Positions 10,365 through 45,300 of a stretch of 55,159 bases of DNA are shown here, piece after piece. A model generated the notes under the pieces. That model saw nothing but the letters and a program-made list of their open reading frames with translations. It had not been told where the DNA came from and did no database searches. A program made the position numbers and the translations under genes. The DNA comes from Octopus sinensis (taxonomy: Eukaryota): the NCBI RefSeq assembly GCF_006345805.1, contig NW_021833739.1, positions 1 to 55,159 on the forward strand, read 5' to 3'. The number at the start of each line of letters is the position of its first letter. The stretch's first letter is position 1.

Positions 10365-12875
<2,511 letters not shown>

Positions 12876-14650: not shown

Positions 14651-15614
14651 AATTTACTCTTTAGTATTTCAAAATATTTTTATGAAACATTGGTAAACAC
14701 GTCTGTTAAAATAAGATGTCAGTGTTATTTTCAATTTTGCATAATTTCGACGACGTTGAACTTTACATTCTTATAAATTCTGCTGCTTCTCAGTTTTAAT
14801 AATCTGCCTAGACAAACTCATTTACTCCACCCACGATATGAAATTAGGTATATAACTTCGTGTCTACAGCTAAAGTATTCGCAGTCTGACATCGCTGAAA
14901 CTTTAAAGTCATTATTTACCACATTTTGTTATATATATATTAATAGCAAGAATAACGTAAACATGAACAACAACAACGACGGTCAGAAGAATGCTAACAT
15001 TTCTGCCAGTTACAAGGAACCATCAGTGCTTCTGACAGAGCTATCACCTCAATTACAATTCACCAAACATTCCATTACAGCCACCAGCACCACCGCCATA
15101 ACCACCACTATCCTCGCAATCACATGTACGCTTATATATATAAGCATACATGTGAAAGAAAAGTCTATCTAGATATATATTCGAGATATATTGGTTTCTC
15201 ATCAGAAGTGACATCATCAATTTGACCAGTCCCAGAGACATAAGCGGCCAGTTTGTATATATACTCAATAAATCCAGTAGCTACAGGAAACTGGAGTTCT
15301 TAATTTGCATACCGTAATTGTTTAACATTAATATTTAATATCAGGGGCCGGTCAAAGGGGATTTCAGTCTACACAGTATCAGAGTATGATATAATATATG
15401 TAACTTATATACCTATGCATGTAGTATGCATGTATATAAACTGATTTAATATTAGATAAGTACTTCCATTAGCATAGAGGTGTTTCTGCTATAGGTAAAC
15501 GTGCGCGCAGAGCTGAGTGGTCGTGCGACATTTTATAGCTTCCTCGGAGCCATTTAAATTAACATTACTCGTGTACGTATGTAAGTACATGTGTGTGTGT
15601 GTGTGCGTGTGTGT

Positions 15615-15679
<65 letters not shown>

Positions 15680-16385
15680 TTTGTTTCCATTGAAACTGAA
15701 ACTACGAGTTTGTCTCGCGGCTCCAATATCACTCAACGGTGATCTTCAGGCGAGTTCTCAGCTGAAAACGCAGTAGCGTGAAACTCGAAACTCGGGGTAA
15801 ACTCTGATTTGCAGTTTTAATATAAAAGTCAAATCCTCTACACCATGTATCGAGGAAGTCTCTGTCATTCGTCCGACATAGACCAAGGTTAGGTATGTAT
15901 GTATGTATGTATGTATGTATGTATGTATGTATGTATGTATGTTAGACCACTGGTAACAAAGAATTTTTCTAAGTATTTTTTGCACCCTGAAATTTATTAA
16001 TTAATGATAAAATGTTTTTTGGCTAATTTTGAAAGAAAATCGTCATTTTTTGTATTTGCTGCCGATAAAAAAACTGCGCGTGCGCGGTGGATTTTGAAAA
16101 ATTATAACATGTGAACACGAGGCATGTTCTTTTTCGCCTCGTTTTTATATGTTAATCTCAGCTTTCCTGCTGATGATACCTTCGCCAATGTAGATTATTT
16201 TATTTACTAAAGATTGCTTGAAACCATGCATGGTACAGGAAATAGGGGGTAAATGTTTTTATTTTTCGTCCCCTTTCGATATTACCCCTAATAGGGGTTT
16301 AGCGTTTAACTACTCTTTCTAGCGAATCAGAGGTGCTGTTATGACTATCTCTTATGTGTTTAAATGTACACTTCATTTATATATA

Positions 16386-16429
<44 letters not shown>

Positions 16430-16437
16430 TATATATA

Positions 16438-16690
16438 AAGTAGTTGTATACTGTCAACTTAATGTGACAGTGCCATGAAGGGAATCATACTACTGCTATT
16501 TAGCCCTAGGAAGCATCAACGCTTCCTGTCGGCCTTGACACAGTTCCTGTGTCCTTATGTTTACAAAGGGGAGACAAGCACCCCCAACAGCTAAGCCTGC
16601 ATCCAGAGACTAGTTTCTGAGTCTTGCTCGTCATCAGTCTGGAGTAGCATGGCCTGCTAAGACAACACTAAAACAACACAGAAACTACAA
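16438..16690 (-). mobile_element. Hammerhead-containing non-coding element, diverged relative of the 352-bp unit; 3' end abuts (TA)n
   Basis: HHR at 16602-16643 followed by three hairpins homologous to those of the 352-bp unit. The 5' boundary is uncertain. Confidence 0.75.
16602..16643 (-). ncRNA. Type I hammerhead ribozyme (minimal stem III)
   Basis: UCCAGA-CUGAUGA-c GAG caaga CUC a-GAAA-CUAG-UC/UCUGGA. 6-bp stem I, intact core, GUC site, C.A mismatch at the base of stem II. Confidence 0.8.
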
Positions 16691-16882
16691 CACTTTAATA
16701 TGACCGTCACTGTCAGTATAGCTATCATCACCATCACTAAATATAACATCACCATTAGATTTCCTTCACAATATCAAAGTGAGTTATATACAGTAGCGGT
16801 AACACATCGTGACGTATCAGCGACAGTGGACGCTGGAAAAACTATAAGTATTTGTGAAGGAAATCTAATTCTCGGCGACAAC

Positions 16883-16943
16883 TATGATTGTCACACGCTG
16901 ACGAGAGGTCAATACCTCGAAACTCGAGTCCGTGTGTATCATA
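16883..16943 (+). ncRNA. Type I hammerhead ribozyme, copy 1
   Basis: UAUGAU.ugu.CACACG-CUGACGA-GAGGU caau ACCUC-GAAA-CUCGAG-UC/CGUGUG.u.AUCAUA. All core nucleotides are present; predicted cut after 16930. Confidence 0.9.
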
Positions 16944-17234
16944 AGTTGAAGACGGGAAGGATGACTTCCCTTTGCAAATACTGACAGGACACAGATAGTG
17001 TGTCTATGGCCAGCTGGAGGAGTGTGTCCTCCTGGGGCTAAAAACTACAGTAGCATCCACCCTTAGGGGTAGCCATATTGAAATGGCAAAAATACGTCAC
17101 GATGTGTTACCGCTACTGTATATAACTCACTTTGATATTTATCATTGTTTGATTTCACTTTTTCAATATCAGCGACAGTGGACGCTGGAAAAAGTATAAG
17201 TATTTGTGAAGGAAATCTAATTCTCGGCGACAAC

Positions 17235-17294
17235 TATGATTGTCACACGCTGCGAGAGGTCAATACCTCGAAACTCGAGTCCGTGTGTATCATA
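17235..17294 (+). ncRNA. Type I hammerhead ribozyme, copy 2 (core deletion)
   Basis: Same fold, but CUGACGA reads CUGCGA (one A lost, either mutation or sequencing error). Cut site equivalent at 17281. Confidence 0.7.
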
Positions 17295-17586
17295 AGTTGA
17301 AGACGGGAAGGATGACTTCCCTTTGCAAATACTGACAGGACACAGATAGTGTGTCTATGGCCAGCTGGAGGAGTGTGTCCTCCTGGGGCTAAAAACTACA
17401 GTAGCATCCACCCTTAGGGGTTAGCCATATTGAAATGGCAAAAATACGTCACGATGTGTTACCGCTACTGTATATAACTCACTTTGATATTTATCATTGT
17501 TTGATTTCACTTTTTCAATATCAGCGACAGTGGACGCTGGAAAAAGTATAAGTATTTGTGAAGGAAATCTAATTCTCGGCGACAAC

Positions 17587-17647
17587 TATGATTGTCACAC
17601 GCTGACGAGAGGTCAATACCTCGAAACTCGAGTCCGTGTGTATCATA
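17587..17647 (+). ncRNA. Type I hammerhead ribozyme, copy 3
   Basis: Identical to copy 1; predicted cut after 17634. Confidence 0.9.
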
Positions 17648-17804
17648 AGTTGAAGACTGGAAGGATGACTTCCCTTTGCAAATACTGACAGGACACAGAT
17701 AGTGTGTCTATGGCCAGCTGGAGGAGTGTGTCCTCCTGGGGCTAAAAACTACAGTAGCATCCACCCTTAGGGGTTAGCCATATTGAAATGGCAAAAATAC
17801 GTCA

Positions 17805-17805
<1 letters not shown>

Positions 17806-17835
<30 letters not shown>

Positions 17836-17876
17836 CACTCTACTTCCCTCTCTATCTAGCTAGCTATCTCACTACT

Positions 17877-17912
<36 letters not shown>

Positions 17913-18007
17913 CTCTCTATCATTATCTCTGTACTTTTCTCTCTCGATCTATCAATTTATCTCTCTACTTTTCTCTCTATCTATCTATCTGTCTCTCTAC
18001 TTTTCCC

Positions 18008-18043
<36 letters not shown>

Positions 18044-18230
18044 CTTCTCTCTCTCTCTCTCTCTCCCTCTCTCAATATATATATCTATAAATACACACAC
18101 ACGCACATATGTATGTATATATTATTTCTATCTATTTCTCTATCTGTCTATCTATCTGTTTATTTATCTATCTCTATCTCTATTTTTCTCTCTTTCTCTG
18201 CTTCTCTATATATTGTCTTGTCTCACTTTA

Positions 18231-18305
<75 letters not shown>
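17806..18305. repeat. Compound (TA)n/(TC)n/(TATC)n microsatellite
   Basis: Visible directly. Confidence 0.95.
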
Positions 18306-18749: not shown

Positions 18750-19248
18750 TATTTAAGTTACTGGACTGCGGCCAGACTGGGGCACTGCTTTGAAAGTGTT
18801 TTTAGTCAAACAACTCGAACCTAGTATTTATGCTTGTTTGTTTATTTTTGTTTTTTTTAGTCAAGTACTTATTCCATCAGGCTCTTTTGTCGAACCGCTA
18901 AGCTATGGAGACGCAAAGAAACCACACGGGCTGTCGAGCGTTGGTGAGGTACAAACACAAGCTGAAAAACACATACACACACACACAAACACATACACAT
19001 GCACACATCCACACACACACACATATACACACACTAACAGACACACATACACACACTCATACACCTGCACACACATACACTGACACACACTCATACACAT
19101 ACATAGACAATTTTTGTCTGCCAATGGTCGACTCGGGGTTCTGGTAGAAGACATTTGCCCCCTCCTAGACGCTGAGCAGTGGCACTGAACTTGAAACCAC
19201 ACGGCTGCAAACCCAGCTTCTTAACCACACAACTGTGTCGTCTGCGCC
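18750..19248 (-). mobile_element. Diverged SINE family A copy
   Basis: Recognisable tail (gactgcggcc...gaaccgctaag), internal (CA)n, and head (ttcttaaccacacaactgtgtcgtctgcgcct). Confidence 0.65.
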
Positions 19249-22194: not shown

Positions 22195-23042
22195 TTCTGG
22201 TATAGACACACAGCCTGGAATTCCGTTCAAGCAATTCGTAATGGATAATCCCTTCCCAGTCCCACCATACGCACAACATCGTTTTACGCGGATGAAGATC
22301 TTGTTTCACGCATGGAATCGCTTGTTTGCCAGGGCTACGCCATTTCTTACGCTTCTTCATATTGATGTACAGGCACCATTTTCCGTCGCCAGTGACGATT
22401 CGCTAAAGAAATCGTTGCTTGTGTCCATGAGTTGAGCGGTGACGAGTAAACAAACCAGCGGAGATTGTGGCTCGTTGAATTTTGTTATTGTCACTTAAAG
22501 CATACGGAACCCGTGCTCCATACTTCTGAACCCTTCCCATCGATTGAAGATGCTTCTTTATAGCAGTGTGGGAGCATTCCATTTTCTCTGCCAGTTCCCT
22601 TGTTGTTTGAGGAGAATTTTCGTGCAAAAGTTGGTTTAATCGCTCTTCATCGAACTCAACAGAACGACAAGAACGAGGTGCGTCTTTGAGGTCAAAATTT
22701 CCATTTTTGAACTTGGCATACGCATCTCGAGCGGTTCTTTCAGCTATGGCACCCTCCCCATACATAGCACCAATGTTACGAGCAGCTTTTACGGCCTTAG
22801 AACCTTGATTAAAAGCAAAAAGAAGGAGGTGTCGAAAATGCTCGTTTTTCTTAATTGACATTCCATTTTAATGATCTGAAAATAAACAATAATTAACTAA
22901 AATGAACTAGAAAAAAAAAACAAAATAGATTCCAAAATTATTCAAAGATAGACTTCTCGAAAAAAAATAGATTCCAAAATTTAAAAACGCAATAAATTCC
23001 AAAATATAAAAAAACCGCGGGAACTTAGTTGCCAACCAAATA
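22195..23042 (-). mobile_element. Mariner element, 5' half (TIR, HTH domains, first catalytic D)
   Basis: TIR ttggttggcaactaagttcccgcgg. ORF 22403-22861 (HFRHLLLFAF...DLKDAPRSCR), then IVTGDGKW and HPRKTMLCVWWD. Confidence 0.9.
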
Positions 23043-24739
23043 CATAATTCATCTCTTAAATATAGAATTCTATTATCTTTATTTGAATTTAGATATTCAG
23101 CTGGTCATTTTAGAAAATATCCAGTTCTTCTGATTTGTAGTAGAACTTTTCCATATTTTAGATATCGATTACATTTCTATTGCACTGCTCTGCTATCTCG
23201 TTATCTTTCATCCAGCTAATACTTCCTTCATCAGTACTTTTGTCTAGTTTTACATTTTCTCAACACCCGTTTTTAAATAGAGTTTCCGATGTGGATATGA
23301 AATAATTTTCATTGAGTAGTTCAGTTTTAATATCTAGAATACTTCTATTCCGGGTATTTGTTTCGTAATATTTGTGCACATTGAGGGTACTCGATAGTAC
23401 AGGGGTGATAGTATATCGTTTACTTTTGCTGACGTAGTTGGATGGTAAGAAGCTTATAGACTTGATTGTGTGGTAAGGTCGTTTATATGCAGATAAAACT
23501 GCCAGGCACAGGTATGGCTGTGTGGTTGAGAGATACGCTTTGTAAATATATGGTTTCAGGTTCAATCCTACTAAATATGTGTTAACTTGCTCAGGATGTC
23601 GAGAGCAATACATAGGCCAAACCAAAAAGTCTATGTCAGAGGTTGACCATACATAGATCCCAGATTAAAATTCGGGAATACAGAAAAATAACATTTAGCG
23701 AACACATCGACATTTGCGCCACTAACGAACAACCCAACTTTAGAATTTTTATCCTATAAATTCAGGGAAGATGCAACCTATAATCAACGCATTAGCAAAG
23801 AGTCAAATTTTATCGCAAAATATAAACCGCTTTTGAATGCTTCCATCTCAGATGAGGTAGACGCATTCAAAAGCTAACGTTTCAGCCAGCTCGCCGCCTT
23901 GTGCGTGTATGTGTGTTTGCGTCTTTGCGCGTATCCTTTTGCACGCATCTGCTTTGCTTCCAATCTACTATAATTTTAATGTCAATTCATCGAAAATACT
24001 TTATAGAAATAATGGTTGATCGACAACAATCAATGAACAAAAAATATCATTTGATCGAAATAAACAGCTGCTGCAATCAATGATTCAAGTAAATTATGGC
24101 AACTATTAAATTCATATAAAATATATTTTCCCGAAATGTTATAAAATAAAAGTTTATATGTCAGGTTTGAAAACCTATGTACTTTAAGCTAATGGCCCTT
24201 TATGGGGGCAAAATCTGTGGTATTTGAATCAATGTTGAAAAACGAGACTAATGTACGAAGAAATTAGCAATTCAATAAAATTAGAATAAACTTAATAACA
24301 ACATGTTATTGATAATTTATAATAGTGTGATAAATTACATATCGATCGATTGATTTCTGCATAAAGAAGAATAAAGCCTTGGAGACTTACATACAGACTT
24401 AGATATCTACTTCTATAGATACACGTGTATACATGTGGTACAATACTTCGGTCCAATAAAAATATACTAAACAAAATATGCGTTTGTTTTTGAGAGTGTG
24501 TGAGTGTGTATATAGATAGACAGACAGACAGACAGAAGACAGGCTGACAGACAGATAGATATGTTTCTTTATTAGCCACACAGGGCTACACACAGACGGG
24601 ACAAATTACAAGGTAGAGCTTTTCTTTTTGGGGAGAAAAAGAAAGGTGGGGGTAGGTTTTCGATCAAAAGGGATCGTAAAAAGGAAAGAAAAAGGAAAGA
24701 GAAAGAGGAAAGAAAGGAAAAGAAAAATCGATCAATAGA

Positions 24740-39685: not shown

Positions 39686-40037
39686 ACACACACACACACA
39701 CACACAAACAACAAACACACACAGACTTGTTACCAGATACAATAAGCCTGTGGCATATCGGAACCTATAAGAAAGCCATTCACGTTATTTTGCCATGGAG
39801 AAAGTTTCTCGTTGTAGACTGATGAGCGTGCGAACTGACTTGATATGTTTACACCTATCTGTCTCCTGTGAGAAATTTTCACCATTAAAAAACACCATGA
39901 ATTGATTTCTAATGAGTTCGAATATGCTTCGAGAATATTCGAGCCGGTAATAAGTTTGTATTTATGCACATCACTTCTGAACGCTTTTATTTTAGAATAT
40001 GAAATGTAGGTCTTATGCCACCACATATATATATATA

Positions 40038-40092
<55 letters not shown>

Positions 40093-40093
<1 letters not shown>

Positions 40094-40380
40094 TTTAAAG
40101 GGCTAAAAAACAACGAAGTGGTCAGCCGTATGCTAGAAGTAGATCACCAACGATCAAACTACAAAAGAAAAAATGTTCTCTAGAGAAAAATTCAGCGGAT
40201 ACCAGAACAATATGCGGGTAAGACAGATGAAAATTCTATAAAAAAACAAGAATTACTCGCAGACCGGCGATTTCGCCTATTAACGAATGAATCACTTACG
40301 TAATCCCTCGTCCGTAGGCTCGTCAGTGCGATCGTTCTACAGGTAATATAATTTGTAAAACTAACCACCAGTTTTCCGTA
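40093..40380 (-). mobile_element. ~290-bp hammerhead-containing element between (TA)n tracts
   Basis: TA tracts on both sides; HHR at 40257-40331. Confidence 0.7.
40257..40331 (-). ncRNA. Type I hammerhead ribozyme with extended stem II
   Basis: UCGCA-CUGACGA-GCCUA[35 nt]UAGGC-GAAA-UC gcc GG-UC/UGCGA. Intact core, G10.1-C11.1 pair, GUC site. Confidence 0.85.
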
Positions 40381-40381
40381 T

Positions 40382-40423
<42 letters not shown>

Positions 40424-40424
40424 A

Positions 40425-40471
<47 letters not shown>

Positions 40472-42319: not shown

Positions 42320-45300
42320 TATGTACATATATATATGTACATGTTCTCCCCAAAAGAAGAAACGTCGTCAAAACTCCAGTGGGGCAGATTTAGCTATGAA
42401 ACCTGACCACGATAAACAGTCTCCTGTTGACGCAGAGTCACCCTTGATTTCTTCCCTGGAGACGTCCAAACCGAAGGGAACAAAATCGAAGCGGCCAAAG
42501 AAGGCGAAGGAACCGGCGGTCGTTTCTGCACATGATCGTTCATGTGCGGATTCTTCCTCATCTGCCTTTTCGGTCCCGGAGGTTCCCCAACCTAATTTGA
42601 GGAGCGTAGACTCAAACCCACCTGAGGACCGTTGTTCTCCCCAAAGAAGAAACGTAGTCAAAACTCCAGTGGGGCAGATTTAGCTATGAAACCTGATCAC
42701 GAAAAATCTGTTTGGATTCTCCCTCACTTGTCCTTCCCATTAATGCCATTGCTCAACCAATTCTGAACGATCTCGATGTGAGTTCATCTGGGGAGTGGTG
42801 CTCCCCCAAACAGAAGAAGAGGCAGTGCAGTTCCAAACCAGGCGGGAAAATTATGACCACTAAACCCATTCCGATCGACCCCGCAGGCCGACATAAGTCC
42901 GATGGCTATGAAACCACCCTTTCGAAATCTTCCAATGAAGAATCGAATACCGCAGCTCATAGTAGAGAACATTTTGCCCACTCAAGATCAGCAATAATTT
43001 ATGGTAAAGCTGAATCCACCTGTGATACAGGCATAAACCGCCTAAAAGATGACATTAATTTTGTTTCCATTTTAGTTGGAAAATTGTTCTCTGTGAACGA
43101 AAATGTCAGTGTCCATAAGGTCGCTCGGCTAGGAAGATTCCAAGCGAACCAACCTCAGATACTAGACCACGCCCAATAAGGGTAATCTTCTCCTCCGATC
43201 GGGAGGCTTCAGTCTTTCTGAACAGAGCTCAGACGCATGCCTGGAGGACCCCAATATGGGTTTCGCGAGGAATACTCACTAAGAGAGAGAATTCGCGGAG
43301 AAACCTGATATCCGAACTAAAGATGAGGAAACAAAGGGGAGAGAAGGTTTACGAATCCAAGATGGACAGATAATCAAGTCCTACTCTGGTCCCATGCTGT
43401 AGTGCTGACAGGGAAAGTGATGTGAGGGCAAATCGAAGTGAAGTCGATACCCCCGCCCCCGTCACGTGCTATCTCTGATACCCCTTATTCTGCTTGTTTC
43501 CCAACTCCCGCCCCTCAGACTTCACAGCTCAGCATCGTCTACACCAACTCGTGCTCCTTATTCCCAAAGTTCATTGAACTATTTACACTGGCCATACGTG
43601 ACTCCCCTGATGTGATAGCTATCACCGAGACTTGGCTGACTCCAGCAGTAAAGGACTCAGAAATCCACCTGCAGGGCTACGTCCTTTTCAGATGTGACAG
43701 AGGGAAAAGGCGAGGTGGAGGTGTTGCTGTGTATGTTAAGTCTGAGCACAAACCGTCCAGCGGTATTCTAACCACTAATGCTCAACCTACAACAAAATTC
43801 GATGGCCGTCTATTGCAAGCTGAGCCTATCTATCTGAGTTTTGCCTGCCCGTGTTGGCTGTCTACAGGCCGCCTCTTGCGACCCCAGGACGATGCTCATC
43901 TACTCGAAGCGATAAGATTCGTTTCAGCTTCGCATGACTGTTTGGTACTAGGAGACTTCAACGCTCCCACGATCGATTGCCCGCATCAATTTGTACAACA
44001 TCTTCCCGTTTCGGCCAGGCCCTTCTTTGACGTGGATGAAGATTGTTTTCTATCGCAACCTGTTGAATATCCGACAAGGCATCGGTCTGGGCAGCAGCCA
44101 TCTATGCTAGATCTGGTATTCTCCGCTATCCAAGATCAGTGTCAGACGTATCTGTGTGCGCCCCTCTTGCCAAGAGTGATCATGCGGTCCTGAAGTTCGT
44201 CATGCACACAACTTTTCTACGCCCCACGACTACTTCGCTGCGCACGTAGAGTCTTCTCTGCAATTAATCTTGAAATTCTAACCGAGGCTTCCGCGCTTCT
44301 GGACTGGCGATCCCTGATGACGTTGTCCTCTGTTGACGAACTATGGTCATCCCTCAAAGCATATGTAATCTGTTTGACTGACCAGGCAGTTCCCGTTGGG
44401 CTTCCCAAGAAGAAGAAACACAAGCCCTGGGTGACGAAGAAGGTTAAACGAGAACGTCGACTCAGAGATATTGCTTGGGCTGAATTCAAAAATCTGGATT
44501 CGACTGCAGCTTTTGAGGTGTACAAAACTCAACGAGACCGAGCCGTGAAAATTGAAAAGAAAGAACGCTTCAGTTATGAATACAAAATCGCGGCAAATGC
44601 CAGTAGCAATCCAAAACCTTCTTTGCCCATGTCCAGCGGATTCCCGCTTGAAAAACAACCAGATTGCAACGTTGGTTGTAAGACTCAACAGGCGTATCGA
44701 TTGAGGACCCTTATCAACAGAGTCAATTATTTGCCGAGGTTTTTCAACTATTTTCAAACAAGATGATGGTCGTGAACCCCCGCCATTTGATAGATCGGTA
44801 CCTCTCCAATGCTTCGATTGGTCATCACGCGGGACGAAGTCAAACGTGTTATTCAAGGCCTCGATGTCAACAAGGGTCGGCCCTGACGGCATACACCCAC
44901 GGGTTATCAAAGCGTTGGCTCTGGTCATCTGCGAGCCCTTAACACGACTATTCAATATGTCATTGGCGACGGGTGTTATAACCTGCAGATGGAAACAGCG
45001 ATAATCTGCTGCCCAATTTTCAAGAAAGGGAGCCGCGAAGACCCGCTTAACTACCGACGGTTCCCTACAAATCAATAATCAGCAGATGTTCGAAACATCT
45101 CTTAAGAAAAGTATGATGCTTCACCTCCTAAACACAGCCTCTATCTCTGATTCCAACACGGCTTCGTGCCGAAGAGATCATGCTTGACCAACTTACTAGT
45201 AATGGAAGAATTGGTGACGCGCATCCTCGATGATAGTGATGCTGTTGACATCGTTTTATTGGACTTTGCCAAAGCTTTTGACTCGGTAAACCACCGCCTA

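What the first reader, a model, noticed from the sequence alone, without database searches (positions are those of the whole stretch)
16816..17805. Retrozyme-like array: 352-bp units each with a type I hammerhead, predicting a ~352-nt self-excising (circular) RNA
Seen: three HHRs at a fixed period, with predicted cuts after 16930, 17281 and 17634 (monomers of 351 and 353 nt; 704 nt if the middle core is dead). There is no meaningful ORF, and the non-integer copy number ends in (TA)n. Established: metazoan retrozymes are tandem non-coding repeats of a few hundred bp with type I HHRs that yield circular RNAs and are thought to be mobilised by Penelope-like elements. Inference: this is such an element. 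I know of no description of this family, but cannot verify that.
Basis: partly seen in the sequence, partly recalled or inferred. Interest (0 to 1): 0.92.

Follow-up and report, generated by a model that had tools for sequence, protein, structure and literature searches.

The report
Hammerhead retrozyme array in (TA)n
This is a young, non-coding 352-bp tandem repeat carrying a self-cleaving hammerhead ribozyme, one of about 600 near-identical copies in a 2.7-Gb animal genome. The shape of its insertions indicates that a Penelope-like retrotransposon copies it into (TA)n microsatellites.

Summary
Window 16815-17805 holds 2.8 tandem copies of a 352-bp unit (99% alike). Units 1 and 3 carry a complete type I hammerhead (Rfam RF00163, 32.2 bits, E 1e-5, 1.8 bits under the curated cut-off). 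Unit 2 has lost core base A6. The predicted cuts at 16930, 17281 and 17634 are correct, and there is no ORF.

- The exact 45-nt ribozyme occurs 587 times in the genome, in short dispersed arrays.
- In 27 insertions the 5' ends vary, while 38 of 40 3' ends fall at two points 46 nt apart (unit 287-291 or 332-336).
- Most flanks are (TA)n.
- About half of the insertions carry a head-to-head inverted arm, and each pair uses one 3' end of each kind.

These are the published marks of Penelope-like element (PLE) insertion, including the PLE "tail". Intact Neptune-like PLE ORFs that also sit in (TA)n coexist in the genome, but none I sampled shares sequence with the repeat.

It is a new member of a known kind, not a new kind. 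Cleavage, circular RNA and the exact partner are untested. The host is probably an octopus, inferred from assembly statistics only.

The parts
16754..16771 (-). 18-nt inverted fragment of the unit (consensus positions 38-55), at the outer edge of the short inverted arm
   Evidence: blastn of the 352-nt consensus against the window: 100% identity. The DNA to its left (16655-16775 as query) is single-copy in the genome.
16770..16817 (-). 48-nt inverted fragment of the unit (consensus positions 279-326), joined head-to-head to the 5' end of the array. It is a stub of the inverted 5'-truncated arm typical of PLE-type insertions.
   Evidence: 100% complementary to 17092-17139 and 17444-17491. Short junction fragments from the same stretch (about 279-329) recur at L002, L012 and L016.
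16815..17165 (+). Unit 1 (351 bp), complete
   Evidence: TRF; 99.4% identical to the family consensus.
16892..16936 (+). Type I hammerhead ribozyme 1, complete core; predicted cut after C at 16930
   Evidence: RF00163, 32.2 bits, E 1e-5, model positions 1-45; sequence read.
17166..17518 (+). Unit 2 (about 352 bp), complete
   Evidence: TRF; 99.7% identical to the consensus.
17244..17287 (+). Hammerhead 2 with core base A6 deleted (CUGCGAG). The core is predicted to be dead. The GUC site ends at 17281.
   Evidence: Sequence; variant '87-' against the consensus; no Rfam match.
17519..17805 (+). Unit 3, partial (consensus 1-287). It ends at the family's first fixed 3' terminus, ...AAAATACGTCAC.
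   Evidence: The same terminus (287-291) is seen in 23 of 40 arms at other loci.
17596..17640 (+). Type I hammerhead ribozyme 3, complete core; predicted cut after 17634
   Evidence: RF00163, 32.2 bits, E 1e-5.
17806..17835 (.). (TA)n microsatellite abutting the 3' end: the target sequence of the family
   Evidence: TRF. Nearly every 3' end at 27 other insertions is followed by (TA)n, and most 5' flanks are (TA)n too.

Best explanation
The array is one insertion of a young, non-autonomous, non-coding retroelement of the metazoan non-LTR retrozyme class.

Proposed cycle:
1. A source array is transcribed as a multimer.
2. The type I hammerheads cut after GUC and release 352-nt monomers. Folding suggests they may act in pairs, through the palindromic ACUCGAGU helix III.
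3. A host RNA ligase can close the monomers into highly base-paired circles.
4. A Penelope-like element (PLE) reverse transcriptase/GIY-YIG endonuclease nicks a (TA)n microsatellite.
5. It starts cDNA synthesis inside the RNA at one of two fixed sites (unit positions about 287-290 and about 333-336), not at the ribozyme-made end.
6. It copies round the template more than once, which gives a tandem array with a variable 5' end.
7. The other target strand is often extended too, which gives a head-to-head inverted arm.

What is shown:
- the array and its ribozyme motifs;
- the copy number and youth of the family;
- the fixed 3' ends and variable 5' ends;
- the (TA)n flanks and the inverted arms;
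- coexisting intact PLE ORFs.

What is inferred:
- transcription, cleavage and circularisation;
- that a PLE supplies the enzyme, and which PLE it is;
- that the template is a circle rather than an uncut multimer.

The window copy itself lacks its left-hand (TA)n and has one dead core. It is probably an ordinary daughter insertion and not necessarily a source.
For: Array and ribozymes.

Family size and age:
- 587 exact copies of the 45-nt ribozyme, 0 for the reversed control.
- The first 100 listed copies form 60 clusters, with same-strand spacing of 344-356 bp.
- Units in short arrays differ from the consensus at 1.9 of 352 positions on average, 0.54%.

Insertion architecture in 27 independent loci:
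- 3' ends lie at 287-291 in 23 arms and at 332-336 in 15 arms, out of 40.
- 5' ends are scattered from position 1 to 320.
- (TA)n flanks most insertions on both sides.
- In all 13 informative head-to-head pairs, one arm ends near 290 and the other near 335.
- All 10 arrays without a full inverted arm, the window copy with its 48-nt stub included, end at 287-291.
- Among neighbouring ribozymes on opposite strands, 12 of 14 are head-to-head.

These features match the published PLE hallmarks.
- 5' truncation, partial tandems, an adjacent inverted 5'-truncated copy, a tail at one end only, and a (TA)n bias (Craig et al. 2021, PMC8557442).
- Reverse transcription starting at two adjacent internal RNA sites not homologous to the cleaved AT-rich DNA, with both strands cleaved and extended (Frangieh et al. 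2024, PMC11167929).

Template:
- Private variants are shared by all units, and by both arms, of one insertion: L005 211C 4/4, L008 189C 3/3, L014 188T 4/4, L023 180A 3/3, L029 163G 3/3. This fits a single-unit template.
- Only 4 of 40 5' ends lie at the ribozyme cut, while 17 of 40 lie at 273-320, just upstream of the start sites. The template is therefore mostly not the linear cleaved monomer.

Partner candidates:
- GIY-YIG hits number at least 147, with 4846 first-look candidates.
- There are intact ORFs of 775-883 aa with RVT_1 plus a C-terminal GIY-YIG domain. They carry a CX4CxxC linker (CGRPNCGIC), the Neptune/Nematis-type motif.
- Copies of this PLE are 5'-truncated, share one 3' end and sit in (TA)n.

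RNA:
- The circular MFE is -117.3 kcal/mol, z = -6.7 against 200 shuffles.
- For two copies, the lowest-energy fold is the double hammerhead: -40.3 kcal/mol against 2 x -17.8.
Against: - There is no RNA evidence of any kind. Transcription, cleavage and circles are untested.
- The ribozyme scores 1.8 bits under Rfam's curated cut-off.
- No sequence similarity was found between the unit and any of the 28 PLE loci sampled. The partner is therefore not identified, and the pLTR relationship reported for Xenopus retrozymes (bioRxiv 10.64898/2026.07.22.740005) is not shown here.
- In the double-hammerhead model the two hammerhead segments are free to associate, whereas in a real transcript they lie 352 nt apart.
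- Ribozyme positions in inserted copies vary about as much as the rest of the unit (0.63% against 0.88%, Fisher p = 0.12), so selection on the motif is not demonstrated. This is expected if daughter copies decay neutrally.
- Some within-array variants are not shared by all units (L014 112T and 306G, L019 141T).
- The 273-320 interval for 5' ends was chosen after seeing the data.
- The window copy is atypical on its left side: unique DNA, no (TA)n, and only a 48 + 18 nt inverted stub.
Confidence: 0.8

Rival explanations
1. The repeat is a SINE-like passenger of a LINE (APE- or REL-type non-LTR element), not of a PLE. The (TA)n would be a 3' microsatellite tail, and the inverted arms would arise by L1-style twin priming.
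For: LINE fragments are present, even in this window: an RVT_1 ORF at 11296-11784 and an APE endonuclease ORF at 43438-44193. 5' truncation and 5' inversions also occur with LINEs (established knowledge of twin priming). No PLE with sequence similarity to the unit was found.
Against: - (TA)n lies on both sides of most insertions, so it is a target and not a tail.
- There are two discrete 3' ends 46 nt apart, used one each in 13 of 13 inverted pairs. That is the PLE-specific 'tail' signature.
- The 3' end is internal to the ribozyme-defined RNA.
- Hammerheads are a PLE association (PMC7229834).
Confidence: 0.08
2. The arrays are ORF-less remnants (solo pseudo-LTR tandems) of an autonomous hammerhead-bearing PLE that I did not sample, rather than a separate non-autonomous family.
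For: PLE pLTRs carry hammerheads and form partial tandems. Xenopus retrozymes are sisters of PLE pLTRs. Only 28 of thousands of PLE loci were inspected.
Against: - None of the 27 insertions has an ORF between or beside its units, and most are bounded by (TA)n on both sides.
- The unit repeats with a strict 352-bp period, up to 10 or more times (L027).
- There is no similarity to the Neptune-like PLEs sampled.
- Even if true, this would differ from the main explanation only in ancestry, not in mechanism.
Confidence: 0.07
3. It is an ordinary satellite DNA that happens to contain a hammerhead-like sequence. It would spread and grow by DNA-level processes (unequal crossing-over, segmental duplication), with no RNA intermediate.
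For: The two longest arrays (L021, L027) are more heterogeneous and show higher-order variant patterns. They probably did grow or homogenise at the DNA level.
Against: - The first 100 listed ribozyme copies alone form 60 separate clusters on two chromosomes, mostly of 1-3 units.
- The 3' ends are fixed, the 5' ends vary, the flanks are (TA)n and the arms are head-to-head. None of this is expected from unequal crossing-over.
Confidence: 0.03

Closest known systems
Metazoan non-LTR retrozymes (Cervera & de la Pena, NAR 2020, PMC7229834), e.g. the 350-390-bp Mytilus galloprovincialis and 330/350-bp axolotl repeats
   Same: - Tandem non-coding units of a few hundred bp, each with a type I hammerhead.
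- GC below 50% and no LTR, PBS or PPT.
- Thousands of bases of dispersed copies.
- A strongly self-paired monomer.
[quoted passage not shown]
- A palindromic helix III that allows dimeric action, as in amphibians.
   Different: - The sequence is unrelated as far as I can tell, and no literature hit exists for it.
- The host is probably a cephalopod, for which I found no retrozyme report.
- RNA expression and circularity were shown for those families and are not tested here.
- The fixed 3' ends, the (TA)n target and the inverted arms are documented here, and I did not find them described in that paper.
Penelope-like elements (Neptune/Poseidon/Naiad) and their insertion signature (Craig et al. 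2021, PMC8557442; Frangieh et al. 2024, PMC11167929)
   Same: - 5' truncation and partial tandems.
- An adjacent inverted 5'-truncated copy.
- An extension ('tail') present at one end only, equal to the stretch between two internal RT start sites.
- An AT-rich or (TA)n target.
- Association with a hammerhead.
   Different: - No RT/EN ORF.
- The tail here is 46 nt, against the 30-40 bp usually quoted.
- The hammerhead is a full canonical type I, not a minimal PLE variant.
- No sequence similarity to the PLE copies sampled in this genome.
Newt satellite 2, Schistosoma Sm-alpha and cave-cricket hammerhead repeats (classic animal hammerhead satellites; from my own knowledge and the citations in PMC7229834)
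   Same: Tandem or SINE-like genomic repeats that encode type I hammerheads. The weak helix III is compensated by double-hammerhead formation in multimeric transcripts.
   Different: These are different sequences in different hosts. Most were described as satellites before the retrozyme/PLE framework existed.
Plant LTR retrozymes (Cervera et al. 2016, PMC4918200)
   Same: Non-autonomous retroelements whose hammerhead-flanked RNA circularises.
   Different: Plant retrozymes have type III hammerheads inside LTRs, a PBS and PPT, 4-bp TSDs and Gypsy-type mobilisation. None of these features is present here.

Membership tests
Type I hammerhead ribozyme (Rfam RF00163) | Invariant catalytic core: C3-U4-G5-A6-N7-G8-A9, G12-A13-A14, the A15.1-U16.1 pair, and H17 at the cleavage site | tested here: met
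   CUGACGA ... GAAA ... A/U pair ... GUC| in units 1 and 3. Unit 2 fails because A6 is deleted.
Type I hammerhead ribozyme (Rfam RF00163) | Three helices around the core, with the open ends in helix I | tested here: met
   - Helix I is CACACG/CGUGUG (6 bp), extended by AUGAU/AUCAU across a UGU/U internal loop.
- Helix II is GAGG/CCUC with loop UCAAUA.
- Helix III is AC/GU capped by UCGA.
(Alignment; folds.)
Type I hammerhead ribozyme (Rfam RF00163) | Score at or above Rfam's curated gathering threshold (34 bits) | tested here: not met
   32.2 bits, E 1e-5 in a 1.6-kb scan. No match at the gathering threshold. The shortfall is 1.8 bits, with all 45 model positions aligned.
Type I hammerhead ribozyme (Rfam RF00163) | Site-specific self-cleavage | not testable with these tools
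   Needs in vitro transcription. Folding predicts that the single-motif fold (-11 kcal/mol) loses to an alternative fold (-17.8), and that a double hammerhead is the lowest-energy state for two copies.
Metazoan non-LTR retrozyme | Tandem repeats of about 150-450 bp, each carrying a type I hammerhead | tested here: met
   Period 352, 2.8 copies. Spacing across the genome is 344-356 bp.
Metazoan non-LTR retrozyme | Non-coding; no LTR, PBS or PPT; GC below 50% | tested here: met
   The longest ATG ORF is 41 aa. Most arrays are bounded by (TA)n on both sides, with no terminal repeats other than the unit itself. GC is 42.6%. I ran no specific search for a PBS or PPT.
Metazoan non-LTR retrozyme | Multi-copy and dispersed in the genome | tested here: met
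   587 exact ribozyme copies on many chromosomes.
Metazoan non-LTR retrozyme | Monomer RNA predicted to be stable and highly self-paired | tested here: met
   Circular MFE -117.3 kcal/mol; z = -6.7; 0 of 200 shuffles fold as well; 63% of bases paired.
Metazoan non-LTR retrozyme | Expressed as monomeric linear and circular RNA | not testable with these tools
PLE-mobilised element (PLE insertion signature) | 5' truncation with a fixed 3' end, and partial tandems | tested here: met
   40 arms: 5' ends range from position 1 to 320, and 38 of 40 3' ends lie at 287-291 or 332-336.
PLE-mobilised element (PLE insertion signature) | An inverted 5'-truncated copy adjacent to the 5' end | tested here: met
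   Full inverted arms are present at 16 of 27 loci, and 12 of 14 opposite-strand neighbours are head-to-head. The window copy has only a 48 + 18 nt stub.
PLE-mobilised element (PLE insertion signature) | A 'tail': an extension at one end only, equal to the distance between two internal RT start sites | tested here: met
   In 13 of 13 inverted pairs one arm ends near 290 and the other near 335. All 10 arrays without a full inverted arm, the window copy included, end at 287-291. The extension is 46 nt, against 30-40 bp in the literature.
PLE-mobilised element (PLE insertion signature) | AT-rich or (TA)n target preference | tested here: met
   (TA)n follows nearly all 3' ends and precedes most 5' ends. 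In the window this holds on the right side only.
PLE-mobilised element (PLE insertion signature) | A coexisting autonomous EN+ PLE | tested here: met
   ORFs of 775-883 aa with RVT_1 plus a C-terminal GIY-YIG domain and a CX4CxxC linker. Copies are 98-99% alike and flanked by (TA)n.
PLE-mobilised element (PLE insertion signature) | Sequence relatedness of the unit to a PLE pLTR or terminus (as shown in Xenopus) | tested here: not met
   blastn (word sizes 7-9) of the consensus against 28 PLE loci gave no match, apart from an unrelated neighbouring retrozyme monomer in L067. The sample is small, and further fetching was blocked.
Plant LTR retrozyme | Type III hammerheads within LTRs, PBS, PPT, 4-bp TSD | tested here: not met
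   The topology is type I, there are no LTRs, and the flanks are (TA)n. I ran no specific search for a PBS or PPT.

The most novel reading that the evidence does not exclude
This family may be a clean natural record that retrozyme RNA is copied by a Neptune-type PLE through target-primed reverse transcription. Synthesis would start at two internal sites and run round a circular (or unit-homogeneous) template into (TA)n. It may also be one member of a wider set of hammerhead-bearing, (TA)n-targeting non-autonomous elements in a probable cephalopod genome. Two further candidate families sit in the same 55-kb window, at 16439-16659 and 40094-40378. If so, the long-standing question of how animal retrozymes move becomes directly testable with a defined RNA, a defined target and intact candidate enzymes.
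Probability: 0.45. Interest if true: 0.6.

Novelty: new member of a known kind. Interest (0 to 1): 0.45.

Why it matters
Animal retrozymes are known, and PLEs have been proposed as their mobilisers, on co-occurrence (2020) and on pLTR similarity in Xenopus (2026 preprint).

This family adds a different kind of evidence. Its copies differ from the consensus by only about 0.5%, so the insertion architecture is still readable. That architecture reproduces the PLE-specific features that were reconstituted in vitro in 2024:
- two internal start sites, which give the one-sided tail;
- extension of both target strands;
- an AT-rich target.

Intact Neptune-like PLE ORFs in the same genome make this a tractable pair for a biochemical test.

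It also shows that a below-threshold Rfam score can hide a real, abundant ribozyme family. For genome annotation, these arrays should be labelled as retrozyme or PLE-dependent repeats, not as unknown satellites.

Tried and rejected
- **Rfam at the gathering threshold over the whole window** gave no hit. The hammerheads appear only in the permissive mode.
- **Rfam permissive scan of eight PLE loci** was swamped by microRNA false hits on (TA)n and (TG)n and showed no hammerhead. It was not informative.
- **A CUGA...GAAA...GUC pattern hit in the sequence upstream of a PLE** (L065 584-626) lacks a helix I. I rejected it as chance.
- **Looking for the autonomous partner by similarity** (blastn of the consensus against 28 PLE loci) found nothing.
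- **Selection on the ribozyme in inserted copies** gave no significant depletion of variants.
- **A Helitron or other DNA-level rolling-circle element** was considered, because Helitrons also insert at AT. I rejected it because the 5' ends vary and the 3' ends are not CTRR.
- **A coding or viroid-like/HDV-like agent** was rejected: there is no ORF, and there are hundreds of chromosomal copies.
- **The window's left flank (16655-16775)** was tested as a possible variant unit. It is single-copy DNA.
- **Organism.** A protein search with the PLE ORF returned no named hit from the host. The only named hits are relatives binned with bivalve symbionts. Assembly size (2,719,151,902 bp), about 30 chromosome-scale scaffolds and an N50 scaffold of 105.89 Mb fit the published Octopus sinensis assembly (2.72 Gb). 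The N50 match rests on my memory of the published figure. This is inference, not proof.
Full report
**1. The observation**

Tandem Repeats Finder reports a single array at 16815-17805 with period 352, 2.8 copies and 99% matches. The three units start 351 and 353 bp apart.

Rfam finds nothing in the window at its curated threshold. A permissive scan of 16400-18000 gives two full-length matches to Hammerhead_1 (RF00163), at 16892-16936 and 17596-17640 on the + strand. Each scores 32.2 bits against a gathering score of 34, with E 1e-5.

Read from the sequence, the motif is CACACG / CUGACGA / GAGG-UCAAUA-CCUC / GAAA / C-UCGA-G / UC | CGUGUG. All invariant core bases are present, the three helices are present, and the open ends lie in helix I, so this is type I.

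The middle copy (17244-17287) reads CUGCGAG. It has lost core base A6 and gives no match.

There is no coding capacity. The longest ATG ORF in four tandem consensus units is 41 aa. The array ends in ...ACGTCAC, followed by (TA)n at 17806-17835.

Positions 16770-16817 are a perfect reverse complement of unit positions 279-326. Positions 16754-16771 are the reverse complement of unit positions 38-55.

**2. The family**

The window is scaffold C10210 of a 2.72-Gb animal assembly.

- The unit matches at 93-100% identity on many chromosomes.
- The exact 45-nt hammerhead occurs 587 times, and its reversed control 0 times.
- The first 100 occurrences fall into 60 clusters of mostly 1-3 units, with same-strand spacing of 344-356 bp.
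- Units in short arrays differ from a 352-nt consensus at 1.9 positions on average, or 0.54%. The family is therefore young.
- The hammerhead is letter-perfect in 68 of about 88 units sampled.

**3. Architecture of the insertions**

I mapped the consensus onto 27 independent loci.

- 5' ends are scattered from position 1 to 320.
- 3' ends fall in two narrow classes: 287-291 (23 arms) and 332-336 (15 arms), out of 40.
- Almost every 3' end is followed by (TA)n, and most insertions have (TA)n on both sides. (TA)n is therefore the target and not a tail.
- Sixteen of the 27 loci carry a second arm in inverted, head-to-head orientation.
- In all 13 pairs where both outer ends can be read, one arm ends near 290 and the other near 335.
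- All 10 arrays without a full inverted arm end at 287-291. This count includes the window copy, which has only the 48-nt stub.
- Only 4 of 40 5' ends lie at the ribozyme cut (position 117).
- Seventeen of 40 5' ends lie at 273-320, just upstream of the start region. The binomial p is 7e-6, but I chose the interval after seeing the data.
- Private variants are usually shared by every unit, and by both arms, of one insertion: L005 211C 4/4, L008 189C 3/3, L014 188T 4/4, L023 180A 3/3, L029 163G 3/3. There are a few exceptions (L014 112T, L019 141T).

**4. What this means**

These are the features the literature lists as peculiar to Penelope-like elements (PLEs).

- Craig et al. 2021 (PMC8557442) describe frequent 5' truncation, partial tandems, an inverted 5'-truncated copy next to the 5' end, a 30-40 bp 'tail' at one end only, and a bias for (TA)n in elements with a CX2-5CxxC linker.
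- Frangieh et al. 2024 (PMC11167929) reconstituted a PLE in vitro. The enzyme cleaves AT-rich DNA on both strands and extends both. It starts reverse transcription at two adjacent sites inside the RNA that are not homologous to the target. The tail is the stretch between the two starts. Ribozyme cleavage was not needed for insertion.

The 46-nt difference between the two 3' ends here, their one-of-each use in inverted pairs, their position away from the ribozyme-made RNA end, and the (TA)n target all fit that picture.

In the predicted fold, the first start lies in the loop of a short AC-rich hairpin at unit positions 278-295. This resembles the AC-rich stem-loop reported for the anole PLE, but it is only a prediction.

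**5. The candidate enzyme**

GIY-YIG domains are abundant in the genome: at least 147 hits over the cut-off among 4846 first-look candidates. Several lie in intact ORFs of 775-883 aa that combine RVT_1 with a C-terminal GIY-YIG domain. The linker CGRPNCGIC (CX4CxxC) sits upstream of the nuclease, which is the motif of the Neptune/Nematis type.

Copies of the 781-aa family are 98-99% alike, 5'-truncated at different points, share one 3' end and are flanked by (TA)n. They are therefore recent and have the same target as the repeat.

I found no sequence similarity between the repeat and any of the 28 PLE loci I could inspect. The specific partner is not identified.

**6. The RNA**

The 352-nt monomer, folded as a circle, has an MFE of -117.3 kcal/mol. 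That is 6.7 standard deviations below dinucleotide shuffles, and 63% of its bases are paired. This matches descriptions of retrozyme circles.

For the isolated ribozyme domain, the canonical fold (-11 kcal/mol) loses to an alternative fold (-17.8). That alternative pairs bases of the catalytic core and of both helix II strands, so neither helix II nor the core can form.

For two copies, the lowest-energy state is the classic double hammerhead, with an 8-bp intermolecular helix III (ACUCGAGU) and swapped helices I (-40.3 against -35.6 kcal/mol). This suggests cutting in multimeric transcripts and stability of the single-motif circle, as in newt and axolotl repeats.

Invertebrate hammerheads with this 2-bp/tetraloop helix III are reported to cut well as monomers, so I hold the dimer point loosely.

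In a double hammerhead each core cuts the partner's site. The dead core of unit 2 therefore need not leave site 17281 uncut.

**7. Comparison and novelty**

All sequence-level criteria of the metazoan non-LTR retrozyme class (Cervera & de la Pena 2020) are met. Expression and circularity cannot be tested here.

Plant LTR retrozymes are excluded, because they have type III ribozymes, LTRs, a PBS and a PPT.

The PLE link was proposed in 2020 on co-occurrence and argued in 2026 from pLTR similarity in Xenopus. The evidence here is architectural and independent of those arguments.

I found no paper in the library that contains this sequence or describes a cephalopod retrozyme.

The host is probably an octopus. 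Its size, about 30 chromosome-scale scaffolds and N50 fit the Octopus sinensis assembly (plus my memory of the published N50). This is not proven.

Verdict: a real feature, correctly interpreted, and a new member of a known kind. It has added value as a clean and possibly tractable case for the mobilisation mechanism.

**8. The window copy itself**

It is somewhat atypical. Its right side is canonical, with the end at 287 followed by (TA)n. Its left side is a 48 + 18 nt inverted stub joined to single-copy DNA, without (TA)n.

Further left, at 16439-16659, lies a 5'-truncated copy of a different repeat on the minus strand. Its 3' end abuts another (TA)n tract at 16378-16437.

With one dead core out of three, nothing marks this copy as a source. 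It is best read as a daughter insertion.

Noticed in passing
window 40094-40378 (- strand): A 285-nt element bounded exactly by (AT)n 40025-40093 and (TA)n 40379-40471.

My own scanner finds a hammerhead-like motif in it: helix I of 5 bp, CUGACGA, helix II GCCUA/UAGGC with a loop of about 43 nt, GAAA, helix III AUC-GCC-GGU, and C17. Rfam does not detect it.

It is a repeat family: at least 46 matches at 89-95% identity, 1708 first-look candidates, mostly full length, some with adjacent inverted partial copies. It is possibly a second, older, mostly monomeric retrozyme-like family.
   Followed up: partly
window 16439-16659 (- strand): A 5'-truncated copy of another abundant repeat (at least 55 matches at 82-97% identity, the near-full-length ones 93-97%; 2883 first-look candidates). 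Its 3' end abuts (TA)n at 16378-16437.

At the tip of a long hairpin it carries UCCAGA-CUGAUGA-(C/U)GAG...CUCA-GAAA-CUAG-UC|UCUGGA. Copies with U at position 10.1 have a proper U-A pair there. Helix III is only AC/GU around a palindromic CUAG, like the minimal PLE hammerheads. There is no Rfam hit even in a 121-nt scan.
   Followed up: partly
L065-L070 (G000 C1:207.47 Mb, C3:65.73 Mb, C6:12.73 Mb, C19:35.62 Mb and others): A Neptune-like PLE family with intact 781-aa RT + GIY-YIG ORFs. In some copies an upstream 479-aa ORF is also present. Copies are 98-99% identical, 5'-truncated, share a 3' end and are flanked by (TA)n. The family was apparently active recently.
   Followed up: partly
window 23576-23741 (+): A remnant of a PLE GIY-YIG domain (tblastn with the 781-aa PLE ORF: 53-65% identity over about 58 aa), next to a mariner-type HTH_48 ORF at 22403-22861 (-).
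   Followed up: no
window 11296-11784 (+) and 43438-44193 (+): An RVT_1 reverse-transcriptase ORF and an APE-type endonuclease ORF, both LINE fragments. Neither matches the PLE ORF by tblastn.
   Followed up: no
L067 5748-6072; L025 371-781: Older relatives of the 352-bp unit, at 89% and 82% identity. The L067 copy is a (TA)n-flanked monomer whose hammerhead has N7 = U and a G.U pair at the base of helix II. The family therefore has older subfamilies.
   Followed up: no
G000 C16:25146363-25146408 and 25146794-25146839 (-), C13:29988995-29989039 (+) and others: Other type I hammerheads above Rfam's cut-off elsewhere in the genome, two of them 431 bp apart. Only 74 of 265,664 first-look candidates were scored. 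This suggests further retrozyme families.
   Followed up: no
proteins P0030, P0042, P0060, P0074, P0110: The only named homologues of the PLE ORF are filed under 'Candidatus Thiodiazotropha' and 'Solemya velum gill symbiont'. These are bacterial symbiont bins of bivalves. A eukaryotic RT + GIY-YIG retroelement there most likely reflects host DNA binned with the symbiont.
   Followed up: no
window 15590-15676, 15893-15942, 16378-16437, 17821-18305, 18969-19103: Very dense microsatellites surround the array: (TG)n, (GTAT)n, (TA)n, (TCTC/TATC)n and (AC)n-rich tracts. In permissive Rfam scans they produce spurious microRNA-family hits such as mir-297 and mir-1277.
   Followed up: no
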